Of a stretch of DNA of 64,000 nucleotides, positions 6,734 through 53,578 are shown one piece after another. Below the pieces are notes generated by a model that saw nothing but the letters and a program-made list of their open reading frames with translations, made no database searches and was not told the DNA's origin. Both the position numbers and the translations under genes were made by a program. This DNA comes from Macrostomum lignano (Eukaryota). The stretch is from NCBI GenBank assembly GCA_002269645.1, contig NIVC01000089.1, positions 496,001 through 560,000 on the forward strand, written 5' to 3'. Every line of letters starts with the position of its first letter. The first letter of the stretch is position 1.

Positions 6734-9679
6734 TGCTCTTAGGCTCCTTGCTCACACACCAGGCAGGCATAAACTGGCACAAGCTTGGCTTCCTTGTGCA
6801 GCAACTTCATCAGCAGATATAGAATCAGCTGGGTATGCTCCGCCCGCTGCTTTAGTTGCCAGTGCCAGCCTTCGCACTTGTTGTTAGTTTGAATAAACTG
6901 GGCAAACATGCTTATCTCTTGGACACTATGCATAGAGCTGTCCAGCCAGGTGCTAGTGACATACTCAGCAAGGTCGAGTTGTTCTGGAGACTAAACACCA
7001 GCAATAACCTAGGCAAGCCCACTAGCCATGTGTTTGCCTGGCAGATAAGGCAAGGCCATCAGTAAGCGGCAGAATTCTTGCATGCCAGGGTCCTTGAGAT
7101 AAGCTCGCTGGAGGCCCATGTGCTATACACAGCAAAAAATTGCTTGGGAGTAATGGAATAGGCAGCCCTGCAATTTAGCATGAGGAAAAATGGAGCATAG
7201 TGACTGCCAGACAGCAGCTTCAAAATCAAGCATGTATGACTCAGGACCTGCCTGGCCTCAATTATATTCTTAAGTAAATTAAAGATAAAATTATAATCAT
7301 GCATAGACTCTTTGACATCAAAGCAAATGCAAGCAAGCAGAACATTCTTCAAAGTAGTGCCTTGGCAATTTGAGGTGGGGGTGGAGAAAGAAAGTAAATT
7401 GGTTTGGAAATTGCGATTAGGGTTTCCTCGAAACTAGTTAGCGTTACATTTGTACAAATAAAGCTGTAAAATCGTGCAGACGAATCACAAGGAATTTCTT
7501 CTCCTTTTACTCTGACAGCTAGGTTCTCAAGTCTGGAGAGGGTAGTCGTAATTGTAGCGGAGCAGTTGTAGAGCGGCACGGTCATTCAGATATAGAAACA
7601 CTAGAGATTGCTGACACTGTAGATTAATGTGTCATTTGCTGAGCTGGTTACTTTTCAGTAGGGTAGTTGCTGCCACCACCATAATTTATATATTACGGAA
7701 TGTAAAGGGTCGTAGAGCTTTCTTTGAGTTGAGACTTTGGTTATTTTTATGCCCCATGGGCAAATGATTCAAGATATATATATATATTAATTCTAGGTGT
7801 GAGACCTGAGCTTGCCAACACCGGGGCCATGCAATGGCTATTGAGTAAAACTAACTGAAAATATGCAGAAAATGATTAAAAACAACTAATGAAATACATT
7901 GGGCCAGAAATTAAGAAAACAAATTTCAATAAATGGTCCATACTTGGGGCCAACAAAGGGAAAGATGAGGTTATTGAACTACAGTTGGCCGCACGGGTTG
8001 GCACTCACACAAGAAAATATTGGCATGCATTTGAATAAAAATTGAAATAAATTTAATTAACTGTGGCAACCCCACTGCCACAAATTCAATTAAATTTACA
8101 ATGAGCACTAGTATCTACACATACATACTCGTACATTAAAGTGTGCATATGCAAACTGTGTATAGATTGTGTACATTGGATGCCAATTATAGCGACAAAT
8201 TGAATCTTTAAATGTGTATTTAATCCTGTATTTTATAGACTAAATTGAATGAATAACAATTTATAACAATAACAATCAAAAAACAATTTATAGCTATGCT
8301 AAATCTTGAGATGATGAAGTGTCCTCAAAATTTGGTCACTTTGTTATCTAGATTTATTAACAATTTTTTGATATGATGAAGCATCCAGAACCATCAAGAT
8401 GACAAAGTGGTTAGATGATGAAGTGTCTAGAAACCATATATTTCTATATTTATAGCCTATTTACACAAAAATTCCTATAATATAGGCTTACAAACTGATA
8501 TACATGATTCAAAATTAAGGATTAATATATATATATATATATAATAAGAAAAAATGTATATATACTTATTACTTAGGCCTATAGTTATATATTACTTAGG
8601 CCTATAGTTATATAATGATTAGACTACATAATTTAGCAGATAGTAAGAGGGACTAGTTCTGTTCTCTTTGTTTCTTTGTGTAAGTACTTTTATATGGAAT
8701 ATATAGGGTATATGCCCTATAGTACAATTTGTCCTGTATAGGCCTACCCTATAATATACCCTACAATTTTGCAATATTACAACAAATTCAAACATAGCAA
8801 CGTGACCCTTGCATGTCAAAAGTTAGGCGTGGCTGTGTGCATAGTTGGTATGCATTACTCCTAAGAAAATAGTATATGTAGGCCCTACAAACCTGGTATG
8901 CACTTCATAGAATCATGAGGACAATTTAAGATTAAGTGGAAAACAGATTAGAAAGTTCATTTTTAATATATTCTTAATAGATAATAGGTAACAACAAAAA
9001 AATCCTAGCTAAGATATGTTGAAAAAAGATTAAGACCTAGATTAGAAAGTTCATTTTAAAAATAAATTTCAAGCTTTCTATTTTTTAAAGCTTATAATAA
9101 GGCATTTTAACATTGTTTCTGCATGTTAATTTTCTGCTATAAATAGTATAAGCAAGAAAAAAATAATCAACCAAATTATTAGCCAATAGGGTCCTTTACA
9201 TACTGTTGAAAAAAGAAAAGGTCATTTGTTGTCACAACACTAGCTTAGATTTGAAAGTGGGCATGCACTCAAAAATTTTTGGTGTGCATTTGTAATTATT
9301 TAATTTTTGTTTGGGTGTGCACCTAGCATGATCTGGACTATAGGAGCCTTAAAGATGACTATTATAATAGATGGCTTGCCACCAGTACCAACTAGGAAAA
9401 AGTTGAGGCAGTAGCTTAACTATTTGATAAGAATTGCCAAAGTCAAGTTGCCACAATTGTACATACTGGGCATCTTAGATGGGTCAGTGAATAGATAGTG
9501 GTTCAAAGTAAAAGTAAACAATGGCTATTTTTGCCACTGTAGGAGACCCTTGCCTTTGTTAGAGACCTGACATCCTGTTGCATCCACTGCTTAGACTAGT
9601 TCTTAATTCTGGAATCAAATGGTAGTCAGGTCAGTGATATGCTAGAGAAAGCCCAGCTTTCTTGTTGCATTGTCAAAAA

Positions 9680-10680
9680 TCAGCCTTTAGGATAATGCAA
9701 TCGTCTATGGTTAAACCATGAGCACATTTATTTATTTTTTCACTTAAACTTCAGGATAATGATTTCAAACTCGGGATAATGGACACCTATTTTTAGAACA
9801 AAACAGCAAACACCAACAACAAAAGATTAGCGCTATGGAAAGTTAATTGTGCAGTATCAATATGGCGCAATTGTCATAGTGCCGAAGACCATTACAGATT
9901 GCAATTGTTGAAAGTGCAGTTGTTCATAATAAAGATATTCCGACCGTTCATCTGACGACCATCAGACACGCTCACTGCTTCTTGCACGATGGAACTTTGT
10001 ATGCTGATATCAGCAGGCATTGTTACTTGACCGTGGGTCGCGGCGCTTTGTCCCATGTTCAACGCACGCGACACTGCATCGCTGCATTGTTGCAGGGACT
10101 TGTCCCGTTTAACTGCCAGGTAGCGCCGGACCGTGCTCTCGGACTTTTGACCCGTGATAGCCATGATCTCGCTCATCGAATGCCCAGCCGATTCCAGGTC
10201 TCAAGAAAGTGCAAGAAGTTCAAAAAATCTTCGTTATCCTTCATGTCCTTCTGAGATGTGGAAAGTCTTGAGATCCAATTGAGTTCGCTGCTAGATACGT
10301 TGGCTAAACTTTCGACAGGCAGATTGCCCCAGTTGATCGGATATGACGTCTGGTTCTCCATGGCCAAGCGAATGTAGCTATTTACGTTTTATTCTCTCTT
10401 TCTCTCCACATCTCCTTCCTTTCCACCCTCTTAACCCCCAGCCTGTTTGCAACTTCGTTGTCTATGGCCCAAACTCCAGTAAACCACCTCAGTCTTTATG
10501 TCTCTCTCTCCTCGGTAACCCCTCTCTCCTTTCGATGCCCTTTTTGTCTATGGCCCCACTGAAATTCGACAATGCGGTTATTCGTAAGTGAGACTTTAGG
10601 ATAATAGTCCTATACTCACTCGTGCGCTGCGCGCACTCATGAGCCGGACTATTATCCTAAAGTCTCACTTACGAATAACC
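9680..10680 (-). mobile_element. Internally deleted Crypton-like (tyrosine recombinase) element
   Basis: The minus strand at 10200-9892 reads DLESAGHSMSEIMAITGQKSESTVRRY...MNNCTFNNC, matching the YR box II (IM..TGH.S...Y) and the Crypton-like NCTF tail. GGATAAT and GTCTATGG motifs occur at both ends; the central catalytic region is absent. Confidence 0.7.
10576..10680. repeat. Perfect 35-bp inverted repeat with 35-bp spacer (cruciform)
   Basis: GGTTATTCGTAAGTGAGACTTTAGGATAATAGTCC (10576-10610) and its exact reverse complement (10646-10680). The spacer holds an inner GTGCGC-TGC-GCGCAC hairpin. Confidence 0.95.
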
Positions 10681-11036
10681 AACCATTATCTGATAGAACT
10701 CATGAGCAGACATATTCTATGTGGTTCTTATTAGTAAGAAAGTGAGACCCACCTGGCTGCGACATGCTTGAGCTAGAGGTCATAGACAAAGATGTCATGA
10801 ATTGATAGTGGTCCTGGGGGTGGTCATTTCCTCAGACTCAGACAGCTTGCAGATGGTCAGTTTTCCTCATATGTAGGCTTGTGTCTTTTTAAGCTAGCTA
10901 ATATTGCTACTCGTTTCTAGCCAATGTATGATCTGCTATTGATACATAAATAAATACAATTAAAAGAAATATTCTTGCTCAATGACAATTCTACTAGAAA
11001 CTCAATACTATGAAACAATTTCAGCAATATTGAACA

Positions 11037-18811: not shown

Positions 18812-19529
18812 CAACCAACTGTACGAATAAGTATGCGCTAAAGCTGCCGATGTTCTTTTAAATGGGGACCCGTTTTTATTAAACTGCTAATAGGAATCAC
18901 AAGGGGCAAGTTAAGCAGAGTTGACTGCGGTTAGCAGCTACACCTTGATAATCCCCAGTGCCAGTCAGTCAATAATCAGTATCTGTGTTTCCTACTATAT
19001 TCAATATTATTAATTGAGTAAATTATTAATAGCTCGTAAAATCGAAATTAATGATTCGAAATTTTATGGATAATTGTTTTTTTTGCTTTGACTATCGCTC
19101 CAGCCTATATAGAATAATTAATAATCGATATGTTTTTATTGTTTTTTCTGCTTTTCCTTTTTTATCTGTGAACACTATATTTTTAATTGCGCTTTGTTTA
19201 TATTTATTCGGTTTTACGGGATGTAAAAGTAAATTCTAAAAGTGAAATTGCTTTTGTCCTATTTAGTGAGTGCGAGTGAGTGTGTAAAATGGTAAAATTT
19301 AAAAGGGATTTCTGTCAATCTCTGGATACAGCCACTCCACTGGTCAGAGATTTCTGTTTTTACCATAGACAGTGGGCCGTGAAAGCACTAATATGAATAA
19401 ATGTAGGCTGCTCAGGCAGAATCCTGAGTCTCTGCTCCTTTCAGCCCATCAGCGTTGACACAATTTCCCAATAGACCCAATATAATTCCAATTTATCCAA
19501 GAAAACTGACAATTCGTTAATAGATTGAG

Positions 19530-19836: not shown

Positions 19837-21097
19837 AGATGAGCAAAGTATTTTAATCGAATCGCTAGGGTGATGAAGCTTAGTACAAACTATTATATCA
19901 CATGTTTAGTCTGTTATGTCATGTTGTTACCATACTACTCATAGGTTAACAAAATTGTTCGATTAACACTCAAATATGTAGTTTTTTAGCATTATTAATA
20001 GCTATTCTATTTATTTTGTTGTCAAAAGTGCATGTACTTCCGTTTTTAATATAAGCATCAGCTAAATATGAGTCTGATGAAAACTGTGCGCATAATTGAA
20101 TAGAGTTACCATTTATCACACCTGTATTACATGCTAGAGTTTGTTTGCGATTGCACGCCAGATAAATTTTATGAGCTAGCAAAGACATTCCACCCGTGGG
20201 TTCCGCATGGTGCACTGGGCCTGGTACAGCACTTGGTGGTGGAGCTTTATATTTTGAAGGTTTTGCTGCTAAAGATTTGGATAGAGTTAATTATTTGCAT
20301 GTTTTAGCTTGGGATTTGTGCTCTTTGGTCCCTAGTTGTTGTTGAGACTTGCCCTGCATTTTGTGTACCTGTGTTGTGTATCCGCTGTTTCCTTATTAGT
20401 ACATGCGACTGCTTAAAAATATATATACAGAGTATGAGAGCTCGCGTCTGCCTTTCTATCGTACTCATAATTCCTAATTGTGAAATTAATTCGCTTAATT
20501 CGCAGGCTTCGAGTTTTTGTTAATTGATAAGGACGCCACACTCATAAAATCATTGAAAATTTCGCGTCATTTCAATATCGAATTTGGCAATTAAATTGAC
20601 TTCAATTTTGGCAATCCCATAGGCATTACGTTATGTCTATGACCAACTGTGGCAGAATCAGTTAAGGTGTGCATTTAACTTTAGCTAAAGTGAGAACATT
20701 TTGGCAACACGGTCATCTTAGCGGCAAACTTTAACAAATAAGAAAGAGAAGTATAGAGCAGCTCCTGATTCAGTGATCCAAATGTCACTGAAAACCATTT
20801 GTGATCAAATGTCACTTAGAGGTTGAATGCTCGTTTTAACTGATTCTGCATTATAGCCCTCCGGAGCGAAAGTGTTAATATTCACGACCCTTTACCGTGA
20901 AGATCGGCCCCTTTTGTGATGCTCAAATGGCAACTCTAGTGCTTGATGAATAACGAAGCTCGTATATCTTGCTTTGCTTGTTTATTTGGCTTTAGGACTA
21001 CAATATATTAATATAGACTGGCTGTTGAGGACTGAAATGAACTGCAACGCGCCGAGGCTTTTCAGTTCATTTCAGTCCGAACAGCCAGTCCATATTA

Positions 21098-22320
21098 GTG
21101 TTATGGGTAGGCTGAAGCGCGGACGCACAACGCGGTTTCACGTCCACAGAAACTGTCTATGGTTGAAAAAGCTTTAGCTATATGCTTCGTGGCGGTTTCG
21201 CAGTCCGCGGAGACTGTCTATGGTTGAAACCCAATAGAGTTTGAAGCATTCTTCTCCTGGTGGGTGGGAGAGAAAATAAGATTTAAACAGCTTTAAGGTT
21301 CGGAATTAGCCATGTTTCACTGGGAATCAATATTGCTTTTGTCAGCCTAACTGAGAATTTTTAGCCTAGCAAAGTGATAAAAAGCCATCCAATGTGAGAA
21401 TCGATTGGTCTATGCGTCGTATTCTTTTATTTTTATACCTTCTGAGCCATATGACTAGCCAATAGCTTGAACGGAATAACGGAAACAGGAACACACTGGA
21501 TGATGTCTTTTTAAAACTTTGCTTGTCCTTTATAGTCTATGGCTCATAGACTAGGCTGGACGCAGCTAGGCCCTTCGTATTCAGCGTAGGCAGGATTCTC
21601 ACATTAAATGGCTTTTTATCACTTTGCTTATCCTTTATAGTCTATGGCCCATAGACTAAGGCTGCACGCAGCCAGGCCCTTCGCAGTCAGCGTAGGCAGG
21701 ATTCTCACTTTGGATGGCTTTATTCTCAGTTAGGCTGACAAAACCTATACTAGACGAAGATATTAGCGGTTTAGAAATGAATGATATTGAGTTTCTGCAG
21801 CAACTTGGACATCGTGATCCTGGTGAAGAAGTTAGTCAGTGGACCGGTGTGACCGTAAGACAGCAGGAGTTGATTGACGCAGAATTGTCCAATCCAAGCA
21901 TTCTGAATAATGCAGAGCTTCTGCGGGAACTGACGGAAGAAGAGGAAGCTGCTGTGCAAGACGTCGAAGAGGCTGCCAAAGGCAAATCGACCACGGATCA
22001 AACCGCTCTCCATGTGAAGCGCTTCAAAAAATATCTGGTATTGAGATTCAAAAAACTATTGAGGTAACTATTGATGAACTCTCCAGCCACATATCATTTT
22101 GAGCTTCCAAGCGTTATTTACTGAATTATTTCGTTTACTTCGTGTTTCATTCCTGTTGTGTTTGGTCTTGTGTTTGTTGGCAGTGAAATATACAGTGGCT
22201 TTAAGTGATGAATTGAATATAATTGAAATATGCTTCAACCATAGACAGTGACGGCGGACAAATGTAGAGCGTTTCAATCGCGTTTCAACCCAGGCAGCCT
22301 ACCCATAATTAGTGATAGCG
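21098..22320 (+). mobile_element. Non-autonomous element with long imperfect TIRs and a Crypton-like N-terminal ORF fragment (21714-22067)
   Basis: Inverted TTATGGGTAGGCTG...ACTGTCTATGGTTGAA at both ends. ORF segment ELTEEEEAAVQDVEEAAKGKSTTDQTALHVKRFKKYL resembles the Crypton/KCTD1-type N-terminal helix. Confidence 0.6.
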
Positions 22321-22398
22321 GGGCTTGTAACAAGATAATAAAGCTAGGACACTTATATATTAGGAGGGATGAGGGAGGCGGCATTTGGGCGCAGCAGC

Positions 22399-23413
22399 CA
22401 TAGACTAATGCACGAGCGTATGTCATGTCTCCCTCCAGAAGGAAAGAGTTTAACTGTCTCCGAACAATGTAAACTTTATGTTAGGAACTCAACAGATTAC
22501 TTGATAACTATTTCATTTTGGTCACTCGTAATGTGTAGCTAATGCATTTGGGCGCAGCGGCCATAGACTAATGCACGAGCGTATGTCATGTCTCCCTCCA
22601 GAAGGAAAGAGTTTAACTATGTCTCCGAACAATGTAAACTTTATGTTAGGAACTCAACAGATTACTTGATAACTATTTCATTTTGGTCACTCGTAATGTG
22701 TAGCTAATGCATTTGGGCGCAGCGGCCATAGACTAATGCACGAGCGTATGTCATGTCTCCCTCCAGAAGGAAAGAGTTTAACTATGTCTCCGAACAATGT
22801 AAACTTTATGTTAGGAACTCAACAGATTACTTGATAACTATTTCATTTTGGTCACTCGTAATGTGTAGCTAATGCATTTGGGCGCAGCGGCCATAGACTA
22901 ATGCACGAGCGTATGTCATGTCTCCCTCCAGAAGGAAAGAGTTTAACTATGTCTCCGAACAATGTAAACTTTATGTTAGGAACTCAACAGATTACTTGAT
23001 AACTATTTCATTTTGGTCACTCGTAATGTGTAGCTAATGCATTTGGGCGCAGCGGCCATAGACTAATGCACGAGCGTATGTCATGTCTCCCTCCAGAAGG
23101 AAAGAGTTTAACTATGTCTCCGAACAATGTAAACTTTATGTTAGGAACTCAACAGATTACTTGATAACTATTTCATTTTGGTCACTCGTAATGTGTAGCT
23201 AATGCATTTGGGCGCAGCGGCCATAGACTAATGCACGAGCGTATGTCATGTCTCCCTCCAGAAGGAAAGAGTTTAACTATGTCTCCGAAAAATGTAAACT
23301 TTATGTTAGGAACTCAACAGATTACTTGATAACTATTTCATTTTGGTCACTCGTAATGTGTAGCTAATGCATTTGGGCGCAGCGGCCATAGACTAATGCA
23401 CGAGCGTATGTCA
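22399..23413. repeat. 165-bp satellite, 6 units plus a partial (repeated at ~25153-26167 and ~27906-28920)
   Basis: CATAGACTAATGCACGAG starts at 22399, 22562, 22727, 22892, 23057, 23222 and 23387. Confidence 0.97.
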
Positions 23414-23419
23414 CCTTTC

Positions 23420-24765
23420 AAAGGGGGCAATTGCGGTATCGCAAACGAACACAGACGTCGGCTGTACTCCCAAGAAGAGTTCTCTTTTCCTGCTTGTGTG
23501 GAGATATACCCTGGTCGATAGGTGGGATAAGCTGCTTGAAATCGAGATAACAGTATAAATATATAATATGGTTACGTAAAGTTTGCTCTTCATGGCCAGA
23601 TTAATCAAGATTTTGTGCCCCTTGCGTCGCCAATATTTTGAGCGTGCAGTGTGCTTAGCCACGCAGAATTACCGATCGCAGCATCTGCTGCTAGCAGCTC
23701 GATATCTTTGGCCAGCAGCTGCCCCAGTGCGTAGCCTAAGTCTATTAGCGTCGCATATTAAATGAAGTTACACGCGGACGTCTGCGAGAACTCCAGGCGA
23801 TATCTGGACTCACTGAACAGTGGGGCACTTGTAAAAGTATATTAGAGCTTTCATGTGGAGTGGGACTCTTACAGTATCCTGTCAAGTCGCTCTTATTGCC
23901 ATTTTTGCTGCTTTCAGTACTCCATCTTTTCTTCTTTTAGACGGTCCCTCTCGCCTGCAGTCTCAATATCTCGCAAGTTGGAGAAGCCATCGATCAGCCT
24001 TGCCCAGAATTTAGATGTGGCCCAGCAAGCTGAATGGTTGGTAGCGGATAAGCGAAGTCAACTAAAGCAGCAATTCTGTATTGGCAATTTCAGCCTGTAA
24101 GAGAAAACAGCTTCGAAACGTCGGATACACTCTGTCCGTTGCGAGCAAAGGCAACCTGTAGTAAAAATGCTAATGCTCCCTCTAACTGATTATTTATTGC
24201 CTCCCAGTCAGGACGCAACAATCTTGCGAATCGAGCATTTAAATTTGCATATTTAGAAGATAATCTTCGGAGGCAGCTGGTGGCTCTGCCTATCATTTCC
24301 GTCCTTAATACGAGGGGTGTCCCAAAAATAGTGGGAAAAAATGATCCACAGACTGACTACAAAATCAGAATTTAAGTAGAAGATATTGAAGTTGTATTTA
24401 ACCACTTGAGCTCCGCTTGAAATCCAAAGCACACTGAAAAAACCCACTGGCTGCAGAGCGGCCATAGACAATTCTAACCCCAGATTCACTCACCCCGAGC
24501 CTACCCGATAGAACCATGTAGACAAAGTCGAAGACTGATAAAATCTGTGTTCTTGACTCTTTGGTACCAGTAGCTTCGTTTGTTTGTACCTGTTCTGTTT
24601 TTCTATCTACAGCAAAATAATTGTTTGACATACTTAATACTTGGTATGCAAGAAATTTTTCTTAGGACCCAGTCAAAAATGTTCAGCTTTTCTATTTCAA
24701 CGACTCTGATCGTCCTGAGTCGACGACTCTTTTCCTCCTCTGATGGCTGCTCTGCAGCCATATCG
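23420..24765 (-). pseudogene. Heavily degenerate Crypton-like tyrosine recombinase (also in copies 2 and 3)
   Basis: Frame-broken minus-strand pieces appear in family order: MAAEQPSEEE..; SIKYVKQLF; ILSVF..VYGRSAASGFFQCALD; YNFNI..SDF; DWEAINNQLEGALAFLLQVAFARNGQ; DGFSNLRD..EEKM; LLQVP..SPDIAWSSRR; ILAT/GHK. Matched by eye only. Confidence 0.5.
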
Positions 24766-27700
24766 GGGATTCTCAGGGTGACTTAAAATCGGGCCATAGA
24801 CGGCAGAATTCGAGCAAATGTCAATGGGAATATCGGAGGTTAGAAAATGGCTGCTCTGCAGCCACTGGGTTCGATAGGGTTAAGATCCTGGGGATGCACC
24901 ACAGAGTCGCCGCACTTTTGTGTGCGAGGGGATCCCACACGCGTTATTAAGCATCGCGATTCTAACTGCAATTTGCGTGAAAAATAAACTGTTATGATTT
25001 TGTGCGACTGACGTTTACTATTGATTCAATCAAATTTGCCTTCCTCACGGCGGCTTAGTTGCGTAACTGGAGGGTTGAATTGTGGGTGAGAAGTTGCCGC
25101 AATAAGTGAGAAAATTTTCATAGCCATAGACTAATCATAGCCATAGACTAGCCATAGACTAATGCACGAGCGTATGTCATGTCTCCCTCCAGAAGGAAAG
25201 AGTTTAACTGTCTCCGAACAATGTAAACTTTATGTTAGGAACTCAACAGATTACTTGATAACTATTTCATTTTGGTCACTCGTAATGTGTAGCTAATGCA
25301 TTTGGGCGCAGCGGCCATAGACTAATGCACGAGCGTATGTCATGTCTCCCTCCAGAAGGAAAGAGTTTAACTATGTCTCCGAACAATGTAAACTTTATGT
25401 TAGGAACTCAACAGATTACTTGATAACTATTTCATTTTGGTCACTCGTAATGTGTAGCTAATGCATTTGGGCGCAGCGGCCATAGACTAATGCACGAGCG
25501 TATGTCATGTCTCCCTCCAGAAGGAAAGAGTTTAACTATGTCTCCGAACAATGTAAACTTTATGTTAGGAACTCAACAGATTACTTGATAACTATTTCAT
25601 TTTGGTCACTCGTAATGTGTAGCTAATGCATTTGGGCGCAGCGGCCATAGACTAATGCACGAGCGTATGTCATGTCTCCCTCCAGAAGGAAAGAGTTTAA
25701 CTATGTCTCCGAACAATGTAAACTTTATGTTAGGAACTCAACAGATTACTTGATAACTATTTCATTTTGGTCACTCGTAATGTGTAGCTAATGCATTTGG
25801 GCGCAGCGGCCATAGACTAATGCACGAGCGTATGTCATGTCTCCCTCCAGAAGGAAAGAGTTTAACTATGTCTCCGAACAATGTAAACTTTATGTTAGGA
25901 ACTCAACAGATTACTTGATAACTATTTCATTTTGGTCACTCGTAATGTGTAGCTAATGCATTTGGGCGCAGCGGCCATAGACTAATGCACGAGCGTATGT
26001 CATGTCTCCCTCCAGAAGGAAAGAGTTTAACTATGTCTCCGAAAAATGTAAACTTTATGTTAGGAACTCAACAGATTACTTGATAACTATTTCATTTTGG
26101 TCACTCGTAATGTGTAGCTAATGCATTTGGGCGCAGCGGCCATAGACTAATGCACGAGCGTATGTCACCTTTCAAAGGGGGCAATTGCGGTATCGCAAAC
26201 GAACACAGACGTCGGCTGTACTCCCAAGAAGAGTTCTCTTTTCCTGCTTGTGTGGAGATATACCCTGGTCGATAGGTGGGATAAGCTGCTTGAAATCGAG
26301 ATAACAGTATAAATATATAATATGGTTACGTAAAGTTTGCTCTTCATGGCCAGATTAATCAAGATTTTGTGCCCCTTGCGTCGCCAATATTTTGAGCGTG
26401 CAGTGTGCTTAGCCACGCAGAATTACCGATCGCAGCATCTGCTGCTAGCAGCTCGATATCTTTGGCCAGCAGCTGCCCCAGTGCGTAGCCTAAGTCTATT
26501 AGCGTCGCATATTAAATGAAGTTACACGCGGACGTCTGCGAGAACTCCAGGCGATATCTGGACTCACTGAACAGTGGGGCACTTGTAAAAGTATATTAGA
26601 GCTTTCATGTGGAGTGGGACTCTTACAGTATCCTGTCAAGTCGCTCTTATTGCCATTTTTGCTGCTTTCAGTACTCCATCTTTTCTTCTTTTAGACGGTC
26701 CCTCTCGCCTGCAGTCTCAATATCTCGCAAGTTGGAGAAGCCATCGATCAGCCTTGCCCAGAATTTAGATGTGGCCCAGCAAGCTGAATGGTTGGTAGCG
26801 GATAAGCGAAGTCAACTAAAGCAGCAATTCTGTATTGGCAATTTCAGCCTGTAAGAGAAAACAGCTTCGAAACGTCGGATACACTCTGTCCGTTGCGAGC
26901 AAAGGCAACCTGTAGTAAAAATGCTAATGCTCCCTCTAACTGATTATTTATTGCCTCCCAGTCAGGACGCAACAATCTTGCGAATCGAGCATTTAAATTT
27001 GCATATTTAGAAGATAATCTTCGGAGGCAGCTGGTGGCTCTGCCTATCATTTCCGTCCTTAATACGAGGGGTGTCCCAAAAATAGTGGGAAAAAATGATC
27101 CACAGACTGACTACAAAATCAGAATTTAAGTAGAAGATATTGAAGTTGTATTTAACCACTTGAGCTCCGCTTGAAATCCAAAGCACACTGAAAAAACCCA
27201 CTGGCTGCAGAGCGGCCATAGACAATTCTAACCCCAGATTCACTCACCCGAGCCTACCCGATAGAACCATGTAGACAAAGTCGAAGACTGATAAAATCTG
27301 TGTTCTTGACTCTTTGGTACCAGTAGCTTCGTTTGTTTGTACCTGTTCTGTTTTTCTATCTACAGCAAAATAATTGTTTGACATACTTAATACTTGGTAT
27401 GCAAGAAATTTTTCTTAGGACCCAGTCAAAAATGTTCAGCTTTTCTATTTCAACGACTCTGATCGTCCTGAGTCGACGACTCTTTTCCTCCTCTGATGGC
27501 TGCTCTGCAGCCATATCGGGGATTCTCAGGGTGACTTAAAATCGGGCCATAGACGGCAGAATTCGAGCAAATGTCAATGGGAATATCGGAGGTTAGAAAA
27601 TGGCTGCTCTGCAGCCACTGGGTTCGATAGGGTTAAGATCCTGGGGATGCACCACAGAGTCGCCGCACTTTTGTGTGCGAGGGGATCCCACACGCGTTAT

Positions 27701-30700
27701 TAAGCATCGCGATTCTAACTGCAATTTGCGTGAAAAATAAACTGTTATGATTTTGTGCGACTGACGTTTACTATTGATTCAATCAAATTTGCCTTCCTCA
27801 CGGCGGCTTAGTTGCGTAACTGGAGGGTTGAATTGTGGGTGAGAAGTTGCCGCAATAAGTGAGAAAATTTTCATAGCCATAGACTAATCATAGCCATAGA
27901 CTAGCCATAGACTAATGCACGAGCGTATGTCATGTCTCCCTCCAGAAGGAAAGAGTTTAACTGTCTCCGAACAATGTAAACTTTATGTTAGGAACTCAAC
28001 AGATTACTTGATAACTATTTCATTTTGGTCACTCGTAATGTGTAGCTAATGCATTTGGGCGCAGCGGCCATAGACTAATGCACGAGCGTATGTCATGTCT
28101 CCCTCCAGAAGGAAAGAGTTTAACTATGTCTCCGAACAATGTAAACTTTATGTTAGGAACTCAACAGATTACTTGATAACTATTTCATTTTGGTCACTCG
28201 TAATGTGTAGCTAATGCATTTGGGCGCAGCGGCCATAGACTAATGCACGAGCGTATGTCATGTCTCCCTCCAGAAGGAAAGAGTTTAACTATGTCTCCGA
28301 ACAATGTAAACTTTATGTTAGGAACTCAACAGATTACTTGATAACTATTTCATTTTGGTCACTCGTAATGTGTAGCTAATGCATTTGGGCGCAGCGGCCA
28401 TAGACTAATGCACGAGCGTATGTCATGTCTCCCTCCAGAAGGAAAGAGTTTAACTATGTCTCCGAACAATGTAAACTTTATGTTAGGAACTCAACAGATT
28501 ACTTGATAACTATTTCATTTTGGTCACTCGTAATGTGTAGCTAATGCATTTGGGCGCAGCGGCCATAGACTAATGCACGAGCGTATGTCATGTCTCCCTC
28601 CAGAAGGAAAGAGTTTAACTATGTCTCCGAACAATGTAAACTTTATGTTAGGAACTCAACAGATTACTTGATAACTATTTCATTTTGGTCACTCGTAATG
28701 TGTAGCTAATGCATTTGGGCGCAGCGGCCATAGACTAATGCACGAGCGTATGTCATGTCTCCCTCCAGAAGGAAAGAGTTTAACTATGTCTCCGAAAAAT
28801 GTAAACTTTATGTTAGGAACTCAACAGATTACTTGATAACTATTTCATTTTGGTCACTCGTAATGTGTAGCTAATGCATTTGGGCGCAGCGGCCATAGAC
28901 TAATGCACGAGCGTATGTCACCTTTCAAAGGGGGCAATTGCGGTATCGCAAACGAACACAGACGTCGGCTGTACTCCCAAGAAGAGTTCTCTTTTCCTGC
29001 TTGTGTGGAGATATACCCTGGTCGATAGGTGGGATAAGCTGCTTGAAATCGAGATAACAGTATAAATATATAATATGGTTACGTAAAGTTTGCTCTTCAT
29101 GGCCAGATTAATCAAGATTTTGTGCCCCTTGCGTCGCCAATATTTTGAGCGTGCAGTGTGCTTAGCCACGCAGAATTACCGATCGCAGCATCTGCTGCTA
29201 GCAGCTCGATATCTTTGGCCAGCAGCTGCCCCAGTGCGTAGCCTAAGTCTATTAGCGTCGCATATTAAATGAAGTTACACGCGGACGTCTGCGAGAACTC
29301 CAGGCGATATCTGGACTCACTGAACAGTGGGGCACTTGTAAAAGTATATTAGAGCTTTCATGTGGAGTGGGACTCTTACAGTATCCTGTCAAGTCGCTCT
29401 TATTGCCATTTTTGCTGCTTTCAGTACTCCATCTTTTCTTCTTTTAGACGGTCCCTCTCGCCTGCAGTCTCAATATCTCGCAAGTTGGAGAAGCCATCGA
29501 TCAGCCTTGCCCAGAATTTAGATGTGGCCCAGCAAGCTGAATGGTTGGTAGCGGATAAGCGAAGTCAACTAAAGCAGCAATTCTGTATTGGCAATTTCAG
29601 CCTGTAAGAGAAAACAGCTTCGAAACGTCGGATACACTCTGTCCGTTGCGAGCAAAGGCAACCTGTAGTAAAAATGCTAATGCTCCCTCTAACTGATTAT
29701 TTATTGCCTCCCAGTCAGGACGCAACAATCTTGCGAATCGAGCATTTAAATTTGCATATTTAGAAGATAATCTTCGGAGGCAGCTGGTGGCTCTGCCTAT
29801 CATTTCCGTCCTTAATACGAGGGGTGTCCCAAAAATAGTGGGAAAAAATGATCCACAGACTGACTACAAAATCAGAATTTAAGTAGAAGATATTGAAGTT
29901 GTATTTAACCACTTGAGCTCCGCTTGAAATCCAAAGCACACTGAAAAAACCCACTGGCTGCAGAGCGGCCATAGACAATTCTAACCCCAGATTCACTCAC
30001 CCCGAGCCTACCCGATAGAACCATGTAGACAAAGTCGAAGACTGATAAAATCTGTGTTCTTGACTCTTTGGTACCAGTAGCTTCGTTTGTTTGTACCTGT
30101 TCTGTTTTTCTATCTACAGCAAAATAATTGTTTGACATACTTAATACTTGGTATGCAAGAAATTTTTCTTAGGACCCAGTCAAAAATGTTCAGCTTTTCT
30201 ATTTCAACGACTCTGATCGTCCTGAGTCGACGACTCTTTTCCTCCTCTGATGGCTGCTCTGCAGCCATATCGGGGATTCTCAGGGTGACTTAAAATCGGG
30301 CCATAGACGGCAGAATTCGAGCAAATGTCAATGGGAATATCGGAGGTTAGAAAATGGCTGCTCTGCAGCCACTGGGTTCGATAGGGTTAAGATCCTGGGG
30401 ATGCACCACAGAGTCGCCGCACTTTTGTGTGCGAGGGGATCCCACACGCGTTATTAAGCATCGCGATTCTAACTGCAATTTGCGTGAAAAATAAACTGTT
30501 ATGATTTTGTGCGACTGACGTTTACTATTGATTCAATCAAATTTGCCTTCCTCACGGCGGCTTAGTTGCGTAACTGGAGGGTTGAATTGTGGGTGAGAAG
30601 TTGCCGCAATAAGTGAGAAAATTTTCATTTTGCTTGGAGGGTGCGACTTTTGACTGTTGCTGAGTATAGTTGCTTGTAAACAGACTACAGATTCATTATG

Positions 30701-33552
30701 CAAGAAGATCCATGCAGATGTCAATTAAGTTTAGACTTTGATTTCGATACCATCAATTATTTTATGGTTCCCGAATTGAGGACCAACAAATAAATAATGG
30801 TCCTCCGATATATCTAGATAGAACCAGCAAATGTATCAATCAACAATGACAGTAAAAGAATCAATGGCGTAACGAAACAGTTGAGATTAACTGACAACAC
30901 TGTTTCTGGTAGCTCTGTCACTCAGTCCGTCATCTAGCTATAGTGTACAATCGCTTGAACTGGATTTCCCTGTCAACTGTAATAGACTTCAGCGTGTTCC
31001 GAGGCGAGGATTTCTCAGCTGCCGAAGGTCCAGCACAGTCAGGAGTCACCTGATTCTCGCGAGTCTCCCCAGATGTATTCTGCAAGAGCGCCCGATGCCA
31101 TCCCGCATGGTCACCGTCGCAGGTGGGCCTGTGAATCGTAGCATGTGTCCATTCGTTCTCCCGATCAGTCACGGTCCATTGTCAAAACTTCCTAGTCATG
31201 GAAAACTTGAGTAGTAGCATCTGCACAATTACATCCTAAATGTAGTTGTCCGTGATTTGATTGTAATTAATTTTGTTATCTATTAATTTTATACTGGGCG
31301 AACATCAGTGTGCTGGAGAAAAGTCCCAAAGCATTTGCTTTAACCAAGCAAACGCTCAGGACATCCCACTGTACTCCAGCCTCTCGTTAAGCTTTTTTGA
31401 GCAATCATAGTTGTCTGAGCAAGAGAGTAGAGCAATAAATGTCTATATAATCTGGTATTTGCCCGGCTTTAGTTTGTACCCAAAAAGATTTACGCCCCGC
31501 TCTCGCATCGATCAAGTCCGGCCGGAGTGACTGCAATGACGCTCCCGAATCCTGGCCATAAAAACTATTGCGCCGCTAACAAGGTGGCCCGCGGGATAAG
31601 AAAACGACAGTTATGCACGCTCGTAGTTTCTTTAGGTTTAGGGCGATCAAAGCAGATTTATAGTTCAGTAATCTAAGCAAACTCTTCGAGCAAACCTACT
31701 CGCCCCTCCTCATCTGGGCCCGTCTTCTCCGAGCGGAAACCCAAAACCCCTTGCCCTGTGTCCCTGAGCAGAAGACACATGTGTCGGCAGTACGACAGAC
31801 AGCGGCAGTATTTCTCCTGCGCAGATTGCTGGCAGGCGGCAGTGGGGGAGCGAGGAGAGAGAGACAACCCGGGGGTGTTGTTGACATCGGAGGCGAGTCC
31901 CACAACGGCGCGGCTTCCACCAGCTGCAAAACTCTCCGATTACAGCATTAGCAAAATTGCCCATCTCTACTTGGACCTACCAAACCAGGCTACAAAACCA
32001 AATTCAACCAACCTGCCCGAAGCTCAGGGTTTTGAGAATGGAGGCTCCTCAGGAGAGCACGGGGCATCATTCAAGCTGAATGCATGCAATATCGAATATA
32101 TGTAATTCTGCGAATGCTCCATGGGGAATAATGTGAGTTTTAGAGTGGCGAGCCAGAGCTCTTATTGTTGATCTAATCAACCCATCATAAGTATTGGACG
32201 TAACGACATGGACTGTTTTTAATAAGAGGACGCACATTGAGCACTTCGAAACTACTGAAGCATTTAAAGGACCGAATTTCGCTCGCTTCCAAACGCATCA
32301 GTCATATTGGAATTTTGCCGTGCTAATTTTGATTTACCACCTTCAGATGCTGCTGGGCAGGATTGTCTTAGAAGATTTAAAGACTTCAAGATTTTCACAA
32401 GTCTTTGTAGAATGCATCGCATCAAAGAGTGTTTACCGCAGACAGTCTCGGGACAAAAATCCGTTTAAACAAATCACATCGGAGATCAGATCGGACTGGC
32501 TTGTCTGGCAGTCTCCGGTAGTTTCCCTGAGTTTTCCTGAAGAATCTTATTAATTATCTCTAACCAAACATTCCAGTTGCTTTGTACAGGTGAGCTCAAA
32601 GAGCGAGAAAAGTACCAACTAGCTAATGGATATTATCAGCGGTTGCAGCACGTGACAACGATTTGTCTATGGCTCGCGCCTACCGGCGCTCGCCAGAGAA
32701 TTGTCACGCACTGGGACCGCTGATTATTTATCCATTCCGTGCCCGCTAGTTTCGTCTATGCTTAATGCTTAGTGCAGGTGCCCTCGAAATGATGAGACAA
32801 ACAACACAACTCTGCCTATGGATTTGAGCGAAAGTCCATCGACAGAACCATTAATTGCGTCTCTGCGTTAAGATGGCCGTTAGTTGAGCTTGATAGAGTC
32901 AGATAGAGTCAGCGTTAATAGAGTCAGAAACTATTTTGTGACACAGACAAATAAACTAAAGCTGGGGCAACGACTGAGAATCAAAGTGCATTGGGTTCGG
33001 ATCGGTATTCAATATGGTGTTTAAAAACCAAACAGTTCCTATCTCTCGAATTCGCCTTTATAAACCTGATTGCTTAAATTTATATCGATGATCTGACAGT
33101 CTCCGTACAGGATTAAGAGAATAAGTCTCAGCTAGTTCAACACTGAGCTATCAGATATTTTTGCCTAAACTGATAACAGCACAGAATTTCTAGCGCTTTA
33201 GCAAGCATTCATGAAAAATTGTAATAGTAAGTTTTTTAGCTGACAAAAGTAGCAATAGGATTTGACATTTCACTCTAGTAAATATTTATTTTAACCCACG
33301 GGTCCACGAGTAAAAAACTGTCAGCGATTACTTCAATCGTTTTTTACTGCAGTGCAATAAGTGTTGAAAAAAATACAAAACTTTAAGTCCAAATCCAGGT
33401 TAGGAAAGGAGTTGCACTTTTGTAAGACGCGGCTATTTTTATGGATTATCCCATATTACTGTACATACACTTACACCCGCACTATAGAAACAATTTTTGG
33501 TCATTATTCCACAGTGGCAAGACGCACGCGAAATCAGCATTCATAACAGTGT

Positions 33553-33872
33553 TGTCTATGGTCAAACTAGGAAACACATCACAGTTGTCTATGGTCAAAC
33601 TATAGGACACACATCTAAGTTGTCTATGGTCAAACTATAGGACACACATCACAGTTGTCTATGGTCAAACTAGGAAACACATCACAGTTGTCTATGGTCA
33701 AACTATAGGACACACATCACAGTTGTCTATGGTCAAACTATAGGACACACATCACAGTCGTCTATGGTCAAACTAGGACACACATCACAGTTGTCTATGG
33801 TCAAACTATAGGACACATCACAGTTGTCTATGATCAAACTATGGGATACACATCACAACTTTGTCTATGGAA
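33553..33872. repeat. 33-35-bp minisatellite, ~10 units, each with one GTCTATGG (one unit GTCTATGA)
   Basis: Unit GTTGTCTATGGTCAAACTATAGGACACACATCACA. Confidence 0.95.
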
Positions 33873-51642: not shown

Positions 51643-53051
51643 AGCTGAAAGCGGGAAGGAGTGAGCTGAGTCACAAAAGAAAGAGGAAAGAAGAAAAAGA
51701 AAAGGACCGCTAGCGACCGGACAACCCACCGGCCTTCCAGCCCATCGGCACGGTCAAACACCTTAGGCATTAGGGGGTACGTTAAGCAGTACCACGGCCT
51801 GCAGGCTGGCAAGCCAGACCCGCATACCCAAGTTCGGCCGAAGCCACTGGATGGGTCGCCAGCGTCGGAGCCCAGTCTGTCCAGCAGCTTTAGGGTCTGC
51901 CTTGAACACACGCGGGGACGAGTACCTGGGTCAACTTGCGAAACAGCGTAAGGGGGGTTCTACGGCTGCCAGCGGCAAATAGCGGGTGCAGACCTCCCTC
52001 TAGCCTTGACCTGCTGAAGATAGGGGCAGGCGTGAAGCATCGCAGACCGTAGCTCATAGGCCTGGTCTGTCTCATACTTCACTGGCGTGCTGAATACACC
52101 TTCGCGTGCTGCAGTACATCAGTACGCTACACTCGTGATTCGTGGAACATTTTTTGAAGGCCGATTTCTTCATTTCGATGTTCGTGCAGGACGACACGAG
52201 TGATGCATTATAAGAGTTGATAGGTTTCGACCTTCCCGCCCCCTTGTGGGGAAGCCTTCGGGCCTCAGGTCTCAGAAATAAATCAATTAGAGTCCTGGCC
52301 CCCCACTCCTGTCAGATGGTCAGCCCCATGGTAGCTTGATCGTGTGGCGAGCAGTCTAGGTCCTATAGCCAAGAGAGGGACAGCGAGAGACAAGCAGGGA
52401 GAATTTTGAAGGTAGAAATTAGTTAACCCGCAGGTTAGCTAACTCGCTGCCACCAGCCCGTACGTCCTGGCTCACCAGACCGGGACTCTCGAAATCGGGC
52501 TTCCGACTAGAAGGGGCTTTGCACTTACCTGCCAACTAGTGTCTTTTTGCTGTCAATCTCGAAGTCATAGCCGATGAAAAGGGACACTGCTGGGACTAGA
52601 TCGCATTGGCCATGCAGGTACAGAGGGGACTTGTGCAGGGGATTCTTGCAGTGGCGAGACTATGGGGTAGCTACATGTACTATTACATTGCTAAATACGA
52701 GGAATTGTACTTTTGGCCTTCAACGCGCCAACTAGCCTCTCATAGCGCTGATGATAGATTAACTCGAACTTCAGAGACCGCATGATTCATTACCCGAGCC
52801 GCTTGGCGAACCTAGAGTGCACAAAGTACATCTCTAGCGCCGATTTTGCACTATTGGCAATTTTGCTCACTGATTTGATAGATTGATCGACTGAGAACTG
52901 CCTTGCCATTGGTCCACTGTGACCGGCGCCTACTAGCTTAGCTACTCATCTGAGCCATCGGCGAACAAAGAAATAAAGCCGATAAAAATAACTGTCAGAT
53001 TTAACCTTCTCCTTAAATCACTTCACACTTCAGATTGAATTGGAGTTTCAG

Positions 53052-53578
53052 GGGGGTGTTTCTCGAAACTCACGTAAGTTCTATGGTAAGTTAGATCGTA
53101 AGAAAGAAATTTACGTGTAGCGTAAGTTTGCTCGTAAGACGCTTTCTCAAAACTCACTTAGACTTTGCGTGGCTTACACTGTTCGTAAGTCGTATCTGAA
53201 ACGAAAAGTTGCATGTCTATGGTCATAAATCTGTAAATATCTTTACTTTGTCTATCGTAAGTTGCTTTCGAGAAAGACCCACCTTCGATAAAGTTTAACT
53301 TGACTTGGCTTAACTAAAGCTTCACGTACTATGCGATTAGTGCTTAAGTGCGTCTTACGACTGATACCGAGCAGTCGTAGGGTTAAGATCAACCTTACGA
53401 AAGACCATAGACATACGAACGTTTCGAGAAACAGTCTTTTGCGCAAAGTTACGAACTCGTAAAGTTGCGATCAATCTTACGCATAGCTAACTTGCGAGCC
53501 CTTCGAGCAACCCGTAAGTGTAGCTTACCCAACTTACGTCTATGGTCGATCGTAAGTTGCCTTCGAGAAAGACCCCCC
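53052..53578. mobile_element. PIF/Harbinger-like MITE
   Basis: TIRs GGGGGTGTTTCTCGAA and TTCGAGAAAGACCCCC, CAG on both flanks (3-bp CWG TSD), and an internal copy of the right end at ~53257-53280. Confidence 0.7.

What the first reader, a model, noticed from the sequence alone, without database searches (positions are those of the whole stretch)
21098..33872. Candidate system: a self-targeting Crypton nest whose GTCTATGG site punctuates satellites at four scales
Seen: GTCTATGG/CCATAGAC occurs about 18 times outside array units (e.g. 9703, 10460, 10546, 21155, 21216, 21535, 22239, 24462, 24794, 32665), against ~2 expected for an 8-mer at uniform composition. It clusters around the YR-like relics. 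It occurs once per unit in the 165-bp and 35-bp arrays, as a palindrome in the 105-bp repeat, and piled up at the 2.75-kb junctions. Established: tyrosine recombinases excise and integrate circles at short core sites without TSDs; I recall TATGG termini for some Crypton groups (to be verified). Inference: the recombinase repeatedly integrates site-bearing circles of various sizes into existing sites, building satellites and a landing pad of nested elements, rather than slippage doing so.
Basis: partly seen in the sequence, partly recalled or inferred. Interest (0 to 1): 0.85.

Follow-up and report, generated by a model that had tools for sequence, protein, structure and literature searches.

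The report
Flatworm transposon motif seeding tandem repeats
An exact 8-base word, GTCTATGG, really is scattered far above chance through this stretch of Macrostomum flatworm DNA and is tied to small Crypton-type (tyrosine recombinase) mobile elements, but the tandem repeats that carry it look like ordinary duplications of motif-rich transposon debris, not arrays built by the recombinase.

Summary
GTCTATGG/CCATAGAC occurs 54 times against 1.5 expected. After repeats are masked it still occurs 16 times against 1.46, in unrelated flanks, with no excess of one-mismatch variants. It sits once per unit in the 165-bp and 35-bp arrays, forms a palindrome in the 106-bp repeat, and is stacked three times at the 2.75-kb junctions.

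The window is from Macrostomum lignano or a close relative. The only recombinase homology is an internally deleted Crypton relic at 9.9-10.4 kb. There is none inside 21-34 kb.

The motif does track this Crypton lineage. Two other Macrostomum-type Crypton loci carry exact copies 93-99 bp upstream of the start codon, and five distant Crypton loci carry none. It also lies 30-63 bp inside the ends of non-coding inverted-repeat elements.

Circle integration is not supported. The right edge of the 2.75-kb repeat has no motif. The junction carries 17- and 11-base stutters. Most minisatellites here lack the motif.

Best reading: the motif is a lineage-specific subterminal cis-element, probably a recombinase-binding site, amplified by ordinary duplication.

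The parts
9892..10367 (-). Internally deleted Crypton-type tyrosine recombinase relic. It keeps the N-terminal ~50 codons (10191-10367) joined to the C-terminal ~100 codons (9892-10200), which include ...ITGQKSESTVRRYL with the catalytic Tyr. It lacks the Arg, Lys and HxxR boxes.
   Evidence: phmmer hits, of which P0002 is 100% identical over 57 aa. P0002 is named 'Tyr recombinase domain-containing protein, Macrostomum lignano'. tblastn of 16 YR proteins hits only 9895-10337 on the minus strand. Relatives carry PF12012 and PF00589.
9664..10683 (-). Likely extent of the non-autonomous Crypton copy plus neighbouring end fragments. It holds four copies of the 12-mer ATTATCCTAAAG (9685, 9749 with one mismatch, 10594, 10651), the 105-bp foldback at 10576-10680, and motifs at 9703, 10460 and 10546, all in the same orientation.
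19363..19370 (-). Isolated motif copy that shares the 12-mer ACTGTCTATGGT with the arms of element B.
21009..21097 (.). 89-bp foldback (84% self-complementary) directly abutting element B.
21101..22308 (+). Element B, a 1,208-bp non-coding inverted-repeat element. Its 14-nt perfect terminal inverted repeat is TTATGGGTAGGCTG / CAGCCTACCCATAA. It is flanked by the 6-bp direct repeat TTAGTG (21095-21100 and 22309-22314). The motif lies 54 bp (21155, plus a 61-bp duplicate at 21216) and 62 bp (22239) from the ends, in inverted orientation. Inside are 2 x 106-bp repeats with the palindromic motif pair (21503-21721) and an orphan ORF (21714-22067).
   Evidence: Sequence read directly. The ORF has no homologue, no Pfam hit and no similarity to the Crypton proteins P0007 and P0016.
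22398..30628 (-). Triplicated 2,724-bp unit in the layout U-J-U-J-U. U occupies 22398-25121, 25152-27874 and 27905-30628. J is the 30-bp junction AGCCATAGACTAATCATAGCCATAGACTAG. Each U holds a 165-bp x 6 array (22381-23413, 25151-26167, 27904-28920) and single motifs at 24462 and 24794, with equivalents in the other copies. The copies are identical apart from one homopolymer indel.
32632..32727 (+). 27-nt inverted repeat (81% complementary) with a motif copy in its 42-nt spacer (32665).
33551..33870 (+). 33/35-bp minisatellite of ~9.3 units with one motif per unit. The array ends exactly at the last motif (33863-33870).
53051..53578 (.). Element C, a small inverted-repeat element (arms GGGGGGTSTTTCTCGAA) rich in CGTAAG. 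It has motif copies at 53215, 53405 and 53538 and near-copies at 53079 and 53250. Those nearest the outer ends lie 28-33 bp in (53079 on the left, 53538 on the right); 53250 lies ~27 bp from an internal right-arm copy at 53284.

Best explanation
The window comes from the flatworm Macrostomum lignano or a very close relative.

GTCTATGG is a lineage-specific cis-element carried in the subterminal regions of a group of small mobile elements in this flatworm. The group includes Crypton-type elements of ~1.85 kb that encode a single tyrosine recombinase, their internally deleted derivatives (the relic at 9.9-10.4 kb), and non-coding elements bounded by inverted repeats (B at 21.1-22.3 kb, C at 53.05-53.58 kb).

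Most likely it is a protein-binding site used in transposition. It would act as an accessory or 'arm-type' site for the element-encoded recombinase, placed a few tens of bases inside the ends and just upstream of the recombinase gene. This step is inferred, not shown.

The 19-34 kb intergenic stretch is an accumulation of such non-coding, motif-bearing pieces. Within it, ordinary tandem duplication (replication slippage, template switching, unequal exchange) has amplified segments that happened to contain a motif. These processes are pervasive in this genome. That explains one motif per unit in the 35-, 106- and 165-bp repeats.

The very young 2.75-kb triplication started from a break or template switch at a motif copy. 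It was sealed with short templated re-copies of the unit's start, which is why the motifs pile up at the junction.
For: - Organism and family: the relic is 100% identical over 57 aa to a M. lignano 'Tyr recombinase domain-containing protein'. Relatives carry DUF3504 and Phage_integrase. R, K, HxxR and Y are invariant across 8 family members.
- Link to Cryptons: L001 is a M. lignano contig with an intact 449-aa YR ORF. It has 6 motifs against 0.44 expected, three of them within 380 bp upstream of the ATG. L002 encodes a 53%-identical YR and has two motifs, 93 and 183 bp upstream of the ATG. The window relic has them 98 and 184 bp upstream. These loci share no nucleotide similarity.
- Lineage specificity: five more distant Crypton loci (L003-L007) have no copy.
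- Subterminal position: about 48-63 bp from an inverted-repeat end at five ends, namely B 54 and 62, relic 52, L002 ~48 and L001 63 (the last a one-mismatch copy). It is about 30 bp in C. These distances were read.
- Exactness: there is no one-mismatch halo.
- Arrays are ordinary: about 30 other minisatellites in the window and L001 lack the motif. Tandem repeats are reported as 15% of this genome (PMC5730564).
- The 2.75-kb repeat: its right edge has no motif, and the junction is ...TTTTCAT|AGCCATAGACTAATCAT|AGCCATAGACT|AGCCATAGAC.... The copies are identical.
Against: - No binding or cleavage data exist, so the role of the motif is inferred from position alone.
- Its orientation relative to the gene and to the element ends differs between families: relic direct, B and L001 inverted, L002 sense.
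- B and C have end sequences unrelated to the Crypton ends. B is flanked by a 6-bp direct repeat, which could be a DDE-type target-site duplication. A different enzyme may therefore move them.
- The constant distance of ~95 bp to the ATG, in either orientation, also fits a promoter element.
- Element boundaries rest on single copies, because no second copy of any family could be fetched.
- The left edge of the 2.75-kb repeat falls exactly at a motif, which hints at motif-directed breakage rather than a purely random duplication.
Confidence: 0.45

Rival explanations
1. The motif is the crossover core of the Crypton recombinase. The enzyme repeatedly integrates site-bearing circles (35 bp, 165 bp, 2.75 kb) into existing sites and so builds the arrays and the nest.
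For: - One motif per unit, and arrays that end at or near a motif.
- The left edge of the 2.75-kb repeat lies exactly at a motif.
- TATGG is the terminal/target pentanucleotide of CryptonS (PMC3212892).
- An active Crypton in Chlamydomonas recombines at a 5-bp site and causes inversions and translocations at such sites (PMC9977147).
- The motif is associated with Crypton loci.
Against: - The right edge of the 2.75-kb repeat has no motif or TATGG, and the junctions carry non-conservative 17- and 11-nt stutters.
- The 165-bp arrays extend 17-20 nt beyond the outermost motifs on both sides. They are not integer units bounded by cores.
- 35-bp double-stranded circles cannot be formed or synapsed (general knowledge of DNA stiffness).
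- Most arrays in this genome lack the motif.
- There is no YR homology in 19-34 kb.
Confidence: 0.1
2. The motif is the binding site of a host (or transposon-borne) transcription factor. It would be a promoter or enhancer element that several transposon families have adopted. The arrays would then be enhancer-like multimers.
For: - It sits 93-99 bp upstream of the ATG in three divergent Crypton families, in either orientation, and 58-74 bp upstream of the orphan ORF in element B.
- Second copies lie 84-106 bp further upstream.
- It occurs in elements with unrelated termini.
Against: - It is absent from the regions upstream of the host genes whose 5' parts lie in the window, though this sample is small.
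- It is present at the 3' side of the relic (9703) and at the ORF-less right end of B, at a distance from the end similar to that on the left.
- The absence of degenerate copies is unusual for a transcription-factor site.
Confidence: 0.2
3. The motif is the subterminal binding site of an unrelated cut-and-paste (DDE) transposase that moves B-type inverted-repeat elements. Cryptons carry it only because they nest with, or insert into, such elements.
For: Element B has a perfect 14-nt terminal inverted repeat and an adjacent 6-bp direct repeat TTAGTG on both sides, the classic signature of a target-site duplication. The motif lies symmetrically 54 and 62 bp from its ends, in inverted orientation.
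Against: - No transposase homology was found. Neither Pfam nor the homology searches hit the ORF in B.
- Fungal Cryptons also have 6-bp terminal direct repeats (PMC3212892), so the flanking repeat is not diagnostic.
- Three Crypton families without nucleotide similarity keep the motif at the same distance from their ATG. Chance nesting is unlikely to produce that.
Confidence: 0.15
4. Artefact: the enrichment is compositional, or the 2.75-kb triplication is an assembly error.
For: The three 2.75-kb copies differ only by one homopolymer indel. Over-expansion by a long-read assembler could produce this.
Against: None of 100 dinucleotide shuffles comes close to the observed count. The enrichment survives repeat masking. 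It recurs in two independent loci from other assemblies.
Confidence: 0.03

Closest known systems
CryptonA / DUF3504-type Cryptons of animals (Kojima & Jurka 2011, PMC3212892)
   Same: A single ORF encodes a tyrosine recombinase with DUF3504/Phage_integrase homology and a QRICH1-like N-terminal region. No reverse transcriptase is present. Non-autonomous, internally deleted derivatives exist.
   Different: That paper found no terminal repeats, direct or inverted, in animal Cryptons. Here inverted repeats flank the ORF 1.63-1.87 kb apart in four of eight loci at p<1/300, are marginal in three and absent in one. The Macrostomum lineage also carries an exact 8-mer repeated subterminally.
CryptonS of oomycetes and diatoms, with TATGG termini (PMC3212892, Additional file 1)
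   Same: The flatworm motif contains TATGG, and element B begins T-TATGG-G at both ends.
   Different: CryptonS is a different Crypton group in a different kingdom and has no DUF3504-type architecture. There TATGG is a 5-bp direct repeat at the exact termini. Here the 8-mer sits tens of bases inside the ends, in variable orientation. Whether any flatworm element ends at TATGG could not be tested.
CryptonF-1_cRei, the active Crypton of Chlamydomonas (PMC9977147)
   Same: Its short element-end motif (CACCG) matches the target (CAYCG). Target sites are found at the breakpoints of inversions and translocations. By analogy, a motif copy at the left breakpoint of the 2.75-kb duplication could be a recombinase-induced event.
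   Different: The events reported there had the site at each breakpoint and were not tandem arrays. Here only one of the two breakpoints carries the motif, and the junction is not clean.
Heterobivalent integrases (lambda Int, Tn916 Int) with arm-type sites separate from core sites
   Same: This is a works-like comparison only. Repeated short binding sites lie tens of bases from the crossover region in mixed orientations and are bound by a separate N-terminal domain.
   Different: No homology of the N-terminal domain was tested and no binding data exist. This is an analogy from general knowledge.
Transposon-borne tandem repeats that grow into satellites (for example, satellite-like repeats carried by non-autonomous Helentrons in oysters; recalled from memory)
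   Same: The tandem arrays sit inside or next to mobile-element fragments, and the repeat unit carries a motif of the element.
   Different: No Rep/helicase or Helitron-type ends were found here. The associated enzyme family is a tyrosine recombinase.

Membership tests
Crypton (tyrosine-recombinase DNA transposon) | Encodes a tyrosine recombinase with the catalytic R...K...HxxR...[H/W]...Y residues | tested here: met
   This holds for the family. R229, K263, H350, R353 and Y385 (P0016 numbering) are invariant in 8 aligned members; the [H/W] position is Q in the Macrostomum members. The window copy itself keeps only the Tyr-bearing C-terminus, so it is non-autonomous.
Crypton (tyrosine-recombinase DNA transposon) | Profile match to Phage_integrase (PF00589) and/or DUF3504 (PF12012) | tested here: inconclusive
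   The window ORFs give no Pfam hit. Close relatives score below the curated cut-off (P0011 25.2 bits and P0002 18.6 bits against 27.1). More distant homologues P0020-P0024 carry PF12012, with PF00589 as well in P0021-P0024 and PF25561 in P0020, as precomputed hits.
Crypton (tyrosine-recombinase DNA transposon) | No reverse transcriptase or RNase H in the element (this separates Cryptons from DIRS and Ngaro) | tested here: met
   In L001 the 449-aa YR ORF is the only ORF of at least 80 aa between the flanking inverted repeats at 9725-11569, apart from an antisense overlap. The window's only RT belongs to a separate non-LTR element at 46.5-51.7 kb.
Crypton (tyrosine-recombinase DNA transposon) | Short (4-6 bp) direct repeats at the two termini, no target-site duplication and no terminal inverted repeats | tested here: inconclusive
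   No flanking duplication was found at L001 or L005. However, inverted repeats flank the ORF in most loci. True termini cannot be fixed from single copies.
Crypton (tyrosine-recombinase DNA transposon) | Multiple dispersed copies (mobility) | tested here: met
   Copies of the relic's C-terminal exon at 96-100% identity are embedded in at least three other predicted proteins (P0001, P0002, P0003). Their DNA could not be fetched.
CryptonS-type TATGG-terminated elements | The element starts and ends at TATGG, one copy being the target | not testable with these tools
   This needs several copies with flanks, or empty sites. No second copy of any family in the window could be retrieved.
Tandem arrays made by site-specific integration of circles | A core site at both outer boundaries and at every junction, with precise (conservative) junctions and integer units | tested here: not met
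   The right boundary of the 2.75-kb repeat has no motif, and its junctions carry 17- and 11-nt stutters. The 165-bp arrays run 17-20 nt past the outer motifs.
Cut-and-paste (DDE) inverted-repeat transposon, considered for element B only | Terminal inverted repeats plus a target-site duplication | tested here: met
   14-nt perfect inverted repeat at 21101-21114 / 22295-22308, with TTAGTG on both sides.
Cut-and-paste (DDE) inverted-repeat transposon, considered for element B only | Transposase homology in the element or in a related autonomous copy | tested here: not met
   The ORF at 21714-22067 has no Pfam hit and no homologue in 5.8 billion proteins.

The most novel reading that the evidence does not exclude
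GTCTATGG is the cleavage or crossover site of an active Macrostomum Crypton recombinase. Recombinase-made breaks or exchanges at dispersed motif copies seed tandem duplications. On this reading a mobile-element enzyme would be a direct cause of part of the unusually large tandem-repeat load of this flatworm genome, and animal Cryptons would have defined ends (inverted repeats plus a shared core) after all.
Probability: 0.15. Interest if true: 0.8.

Novelty: new variant of a known kind. Interest (0 to 1): 0.45.

Why it matters
Cryptons are the least understood class of eukaryotic DNA transposon. Their ends in animals are described as featureless, and their mechanism has never been reconstituted. 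This lineage offers three things:
- an exact, easily searched 8-base cis-element;
- flanking inverted repeats;
- an intact recombinase gene in a flatworm where transgenesis already works.

Together these give a concrete substrate for binding, cleavage and excision assays. The finding also bears on why about 15% of the M. lignano genome is tandem repeat. The data here indicate that the motif marks where some arrays arose, not that the recombinase builds them.

Tried and rejected
- Pfam scan of all stop-to-stop ORFs of at least 35 aa in 19.0-25.2 kb and 30.2-33.4 kb: nothing found.
- The ORF at 21714-22067 looked to me like a Crypton N-terminus by eye. It has no homologue and no BLASTP similarity to the Crypton proteins P0007 and P0016, so I dropped that claim.
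- Pfam on three-frame translations of the minus strand of 8.8-11.3 kb and one minus-strand frame of 6.0-8.3 kb: only a weak MULE hit. The YR relic is too short for Pfam and was found by phmmer instead.
- Fetching other copies: P0001, P0003 and two window ORFs are not on record. The host SCY1-like gene has no close match in the protein collection, so homeologous empty sites could not be compared.
- A single large element spanning 22.3-33.9 kb with inverted subterminal arrays: no terminal inverted repeat was found.
- The two 331-bp intervals between motifs inside the 2.75-kb unit are not diverged tandem copies.
- RNA genes: no Rfam family and no tRNA in the window.
- Helitron-style rolling circle for the head-to-tail units: no Pfam hit of any kind (so no Rep/helicase) in the ORFs scanned, and the ends do not resemble TC...CTRR. 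This was considered from memory only.
- Alignment of the three Crypton upstream regions: no conservation beyond the motif.
- Literature: no paper links Macrostomum Cryptons or this motif.

Full report
**Observation**

GTCTATGG/CCATAGAC occurs 54 times in the 64-kb window against 1.49 expected from dinucleotide shuffles, whose maximum was 6. Much of this excess comes from tandem repeats. But after masking every 14-mer already seen, 16 copies remain against 1.46 expected, and the word is the top non-low-complexity 8-mer in the window.

The flanks of about 21 independent copies share nothing beyond a weak W-T-[T/A] before the motif and Y-Y-n-A-A-A after it. A self-BLAST finds no similarity between the segments that carry it. 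One-mismatch variants are not enriched (32 against 40.7 expected), so the copies are exact rather than a decaying family.

All copies fall in three places: 9.7-10.55 kb, 19.36-33.87 kb and 53.2-53.55 kb. The remaining ~48 kb has none.
- one motif per 165-bp and per 35-bp unit;
- a palindromic pair in the 106-bp repeat;
- three copies at each 2.75-kb junction.

**Organism and recombinase**

Pfam found nothing in the ORFs of 19-33 kb. An ORF at 9892-10200 on the minus strand reads ...AGHSMSEIMAITGQKSESTVRRYL... A full HMMER search with it returned proteins up to 100% identical.

A word-indexed search with the best of these (P0002) named them 'Tyr recombinase domain-containing protein, Macrostomum lignano'. 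It also reached more distant homologues carrying DUF3504 and Phage_integrase (Pfam checks). Eight aligned members keep R, K, HxxR and Y invariant, so the family looks catalytically competent.

tblastn with 16 family proteins hits the window only at 9895-10337 on the minus strand. The hits cover the first ~50 and the last ~100 residues, joined directly. The window copy is therefore an internally deleted, non-autonomous Crypton. It lies ~350 bp upstream of a SCY1-like kinase gene. Neither 19-34 kb nor 53 kb shows any recombinase homology.

**Is the motif linked to Cryptons?**

I fetched the loci of related recombinases.
- L001 is a 21-kb piece of M. lignano contig NIVC01002014.1 with an intact 449-aa ORF. 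It has six motif copies against 0.44 expected. Three lie within 380 bp upstream of the ATG, the nearest 99 bp away.
- L002 is a Logan contig whose recombinase is 53% identical to P0002. It has two copies, 93 and 183 bp upstream.
- The window relic has copies 98 and 184 bp upstream of its ATG and one 185 bp downstream of its stop.

L001 shows no nucleotide similarity to the window, and an alignment of the three upstream regions shows no conservation beyond the motif. The repeated presence of an exact 8-mer at the same distance is therefore not inherited background.

Five loci of more distant Cryptons from other organisms (L003-L007) have no copy. The motif is thus specific to the Macrostomum lineage of these elements, or to their host.

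**Element anatomy**

In four of eight recombinase loci an inverted repeat flanks the ORF at p<1/300, with the arms 1.67-1.87 kb apart. Three loci are marginal and one shows none. The L001 arm ATTATCATATAGACTA and a 12-mer that occurs four times around the window relic (ATTATCCTAAAG) share ATTATC-MTAWAG. The literature states that animal Cryptons have neither direct nor inverted terminal repeats (PMC3212892; repeated in PMC13465315).

The motif lies 54 and 62 bp from its ends in inverted orientation. Element C (53051-53578) has 17-nt inverted ends, with motif copies or near-copies about 30 bp inside.

At five ends the motif lies 48-63 bp from an inverted-repeat end: B 54 and 62, relic 52, L002 ~48 and L001 63 (the last a one-mismatch copy). 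This points to a subterminal cis-element used in transposition. However, its orientation is not consistent between families. B and C also have ends unrelated to the Crypton ends. B's orphan ORF has no homologue.

**The arrays**

The 2.75-kb repeat has the layout U-J-U-J-U. U is 2,724 bp (22398-25121, 25152-27874, 27905-30628) and J is 30 bp. The three copies are identical except for one homopolymer indel.

The left edge falls exactly at a motif. The right edge is ...GAAAATTTTCAT|TTTGCTTGG, with no motif or TATGG. The junction reads ...TTTTCAT|AGCCATAGACTAATCAT|AGCCATAGACT|AGCCATAGACTAATGCACG... This is the end of U followed by two abortive re-copies of the start of U (17 and 11 nt) before the full copy.

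A conservative exchange between two core sites would require a core at both edges and would leave a clean joint. Short templated re-copies at a duplication junction are, from general knowledge, what replication template switching or polymerase-theta end joining leaves behind.

The 165-bp arrays extend 17-20 nt beyond their outermost motifs. The 35-bp array ends at a motif on the right but fades through a degenerate unit on the left.

About 30 other minisatellites with 15-35-bp units in the window and in L001 contain no motif. Tandem repeats are reported as 15% of this genome (PMC5730564). Array formation is therefore a general property of the genome, and motif-rich DNA simply yields motif-bearing arrays. 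Double-stranded circles of 35 bp are not physically credible recombination substrates (general knowledge).

**Mechanism and alternatives**

My best reading (confidence about 0.45) has three parts:
- The motif is a subterminal binding site, probably for the element-encoded recombinase, shared by autonomous Crypton-type elements and their non-coding derivatives.
- The 19-34 kb stretch is a pile-up of such derivatives.
- The arrays are ordinary duplications. One of them may have been seeded by a break at a motif.

The link between the motif and Crypton loci is shown. The binding role and the origin of the break are inferred.

The rivals are:
- a promoter or enhancer site adopted by several transposons (0.2). 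The constant distance of ~95 bp to the ATG in either orientation favours it. The copies at 3' ends and at ORF-less ends count against it.
- the binding site of an unrelated DDE transposase that moves B-type elements (0.15);
- artefact (0.03).

**Comparison and novelty**

The recombinase belongs with the DUF3504-type animal Cryptons. The TATGG recollection is right for CryptonS of oomycetes and diatoms only (PMC3212892, Additional file 1). The Chlamydomonas work shows that an active Crypton recombines at a 5-bp site and rearranges chromosomes at such sites (PMC9977147). A motif at one duplication breakpoint is therefore suggestive but not diagnostic.

I found no paper on Macrostomum Cryptons or on this motif. 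I rate this as a new variant of a known kind and of moderate interest.

**Limits**

No second DNA copy of any family in the window could be retrieved. The host gene gave no close match for comparison with a homeologous locus. All element boundaries therefore rest on single copies.

Noticed in passing
window 1012-8746 (16 sites) and 54901: A second exact 8-mer, the perfect palindrome TAGGCCTA, occurs 17 times against 1.0 expected, in unrelated AT-rich flanks. Sixteen of the copies lie in the first 8.75 kb. Its form TA-GG-CC-TA resembles a Tc1/mariner-type excision footprint. That is my inference and is untested.
   Followed up: partly
L001 9725-9747 / 11547-11569; L002 102-119 / 1945-1963; L003 ~345-385 / ~2025-2064; L005 ~5653-5677 / ~7505-7530: Inverted repeats flank the Crypton-type recombinase ORF in four of eight loci at p<1/300, with arms 1.67-1.87 kb apart. 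Three further loci are marginal and one shows none. The literature says animal Cryptons have no terminal repeats. L003 and L004 also carry family-specific palindromes near their ends.
   Followed up: partly
window 5113-5282 and 5560-5750; ~7.0-7.2 kb minus strand: Two 14-bp minisatellites in inverted orientation to each other (TTGCCCGCCGAGAT and GCGGGCAAATCTCC) lie next to a weak MULE transposase relic (PF10551, E=0.0018). They may be subterminal repeat arrays of a Mutator-like element.
   Followed up: no
window 46508-51729, minus strand: A non-LTR retrotransposon that looks intact, with a 517-aa ORF1 and a 1,223-aa ORF2. Its G+C is 55-63% against ~42% in the surrounding DNA.
   Followed up: no
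window 9664-10683 versus 11034 onward: The Crypton relic sits ~350 bp upstream of the first coding exon of a SCY1-like kinase gene (+ strand, exons to 18811). Several introns of that gene are filled with 22-35-bp minisatellites.
   Followed up: no
window 21009-21097 and 10576-10680; L001 9623-9714: Foldbacks of 89-105 bp lie directly beside motif-bearing element ends. The one in L001 has the motif at both of its outer tips.
   Followed up: partly
window 24441-24465 / 24847-24871 (and equivalents in the other two copies): A 25-nt inverted repeat (92% complementary) lies inside the 2.75-kb unit. Its left arm overlaps the motif at 24462. A related 18-mer, ATGGCTGCTCTGCAGCCA, occurs three times per unit, and GGCTGCAG is itself enriched (11 against 3.0 expected).
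   Followed up: partly
L001 13310-13999, minus strand: ORFs that look to me like a THAP domain and a P-element-type transposase tail lie next to the isolated motif copy at 14059. This was judged by eye only.
   Followed up: no
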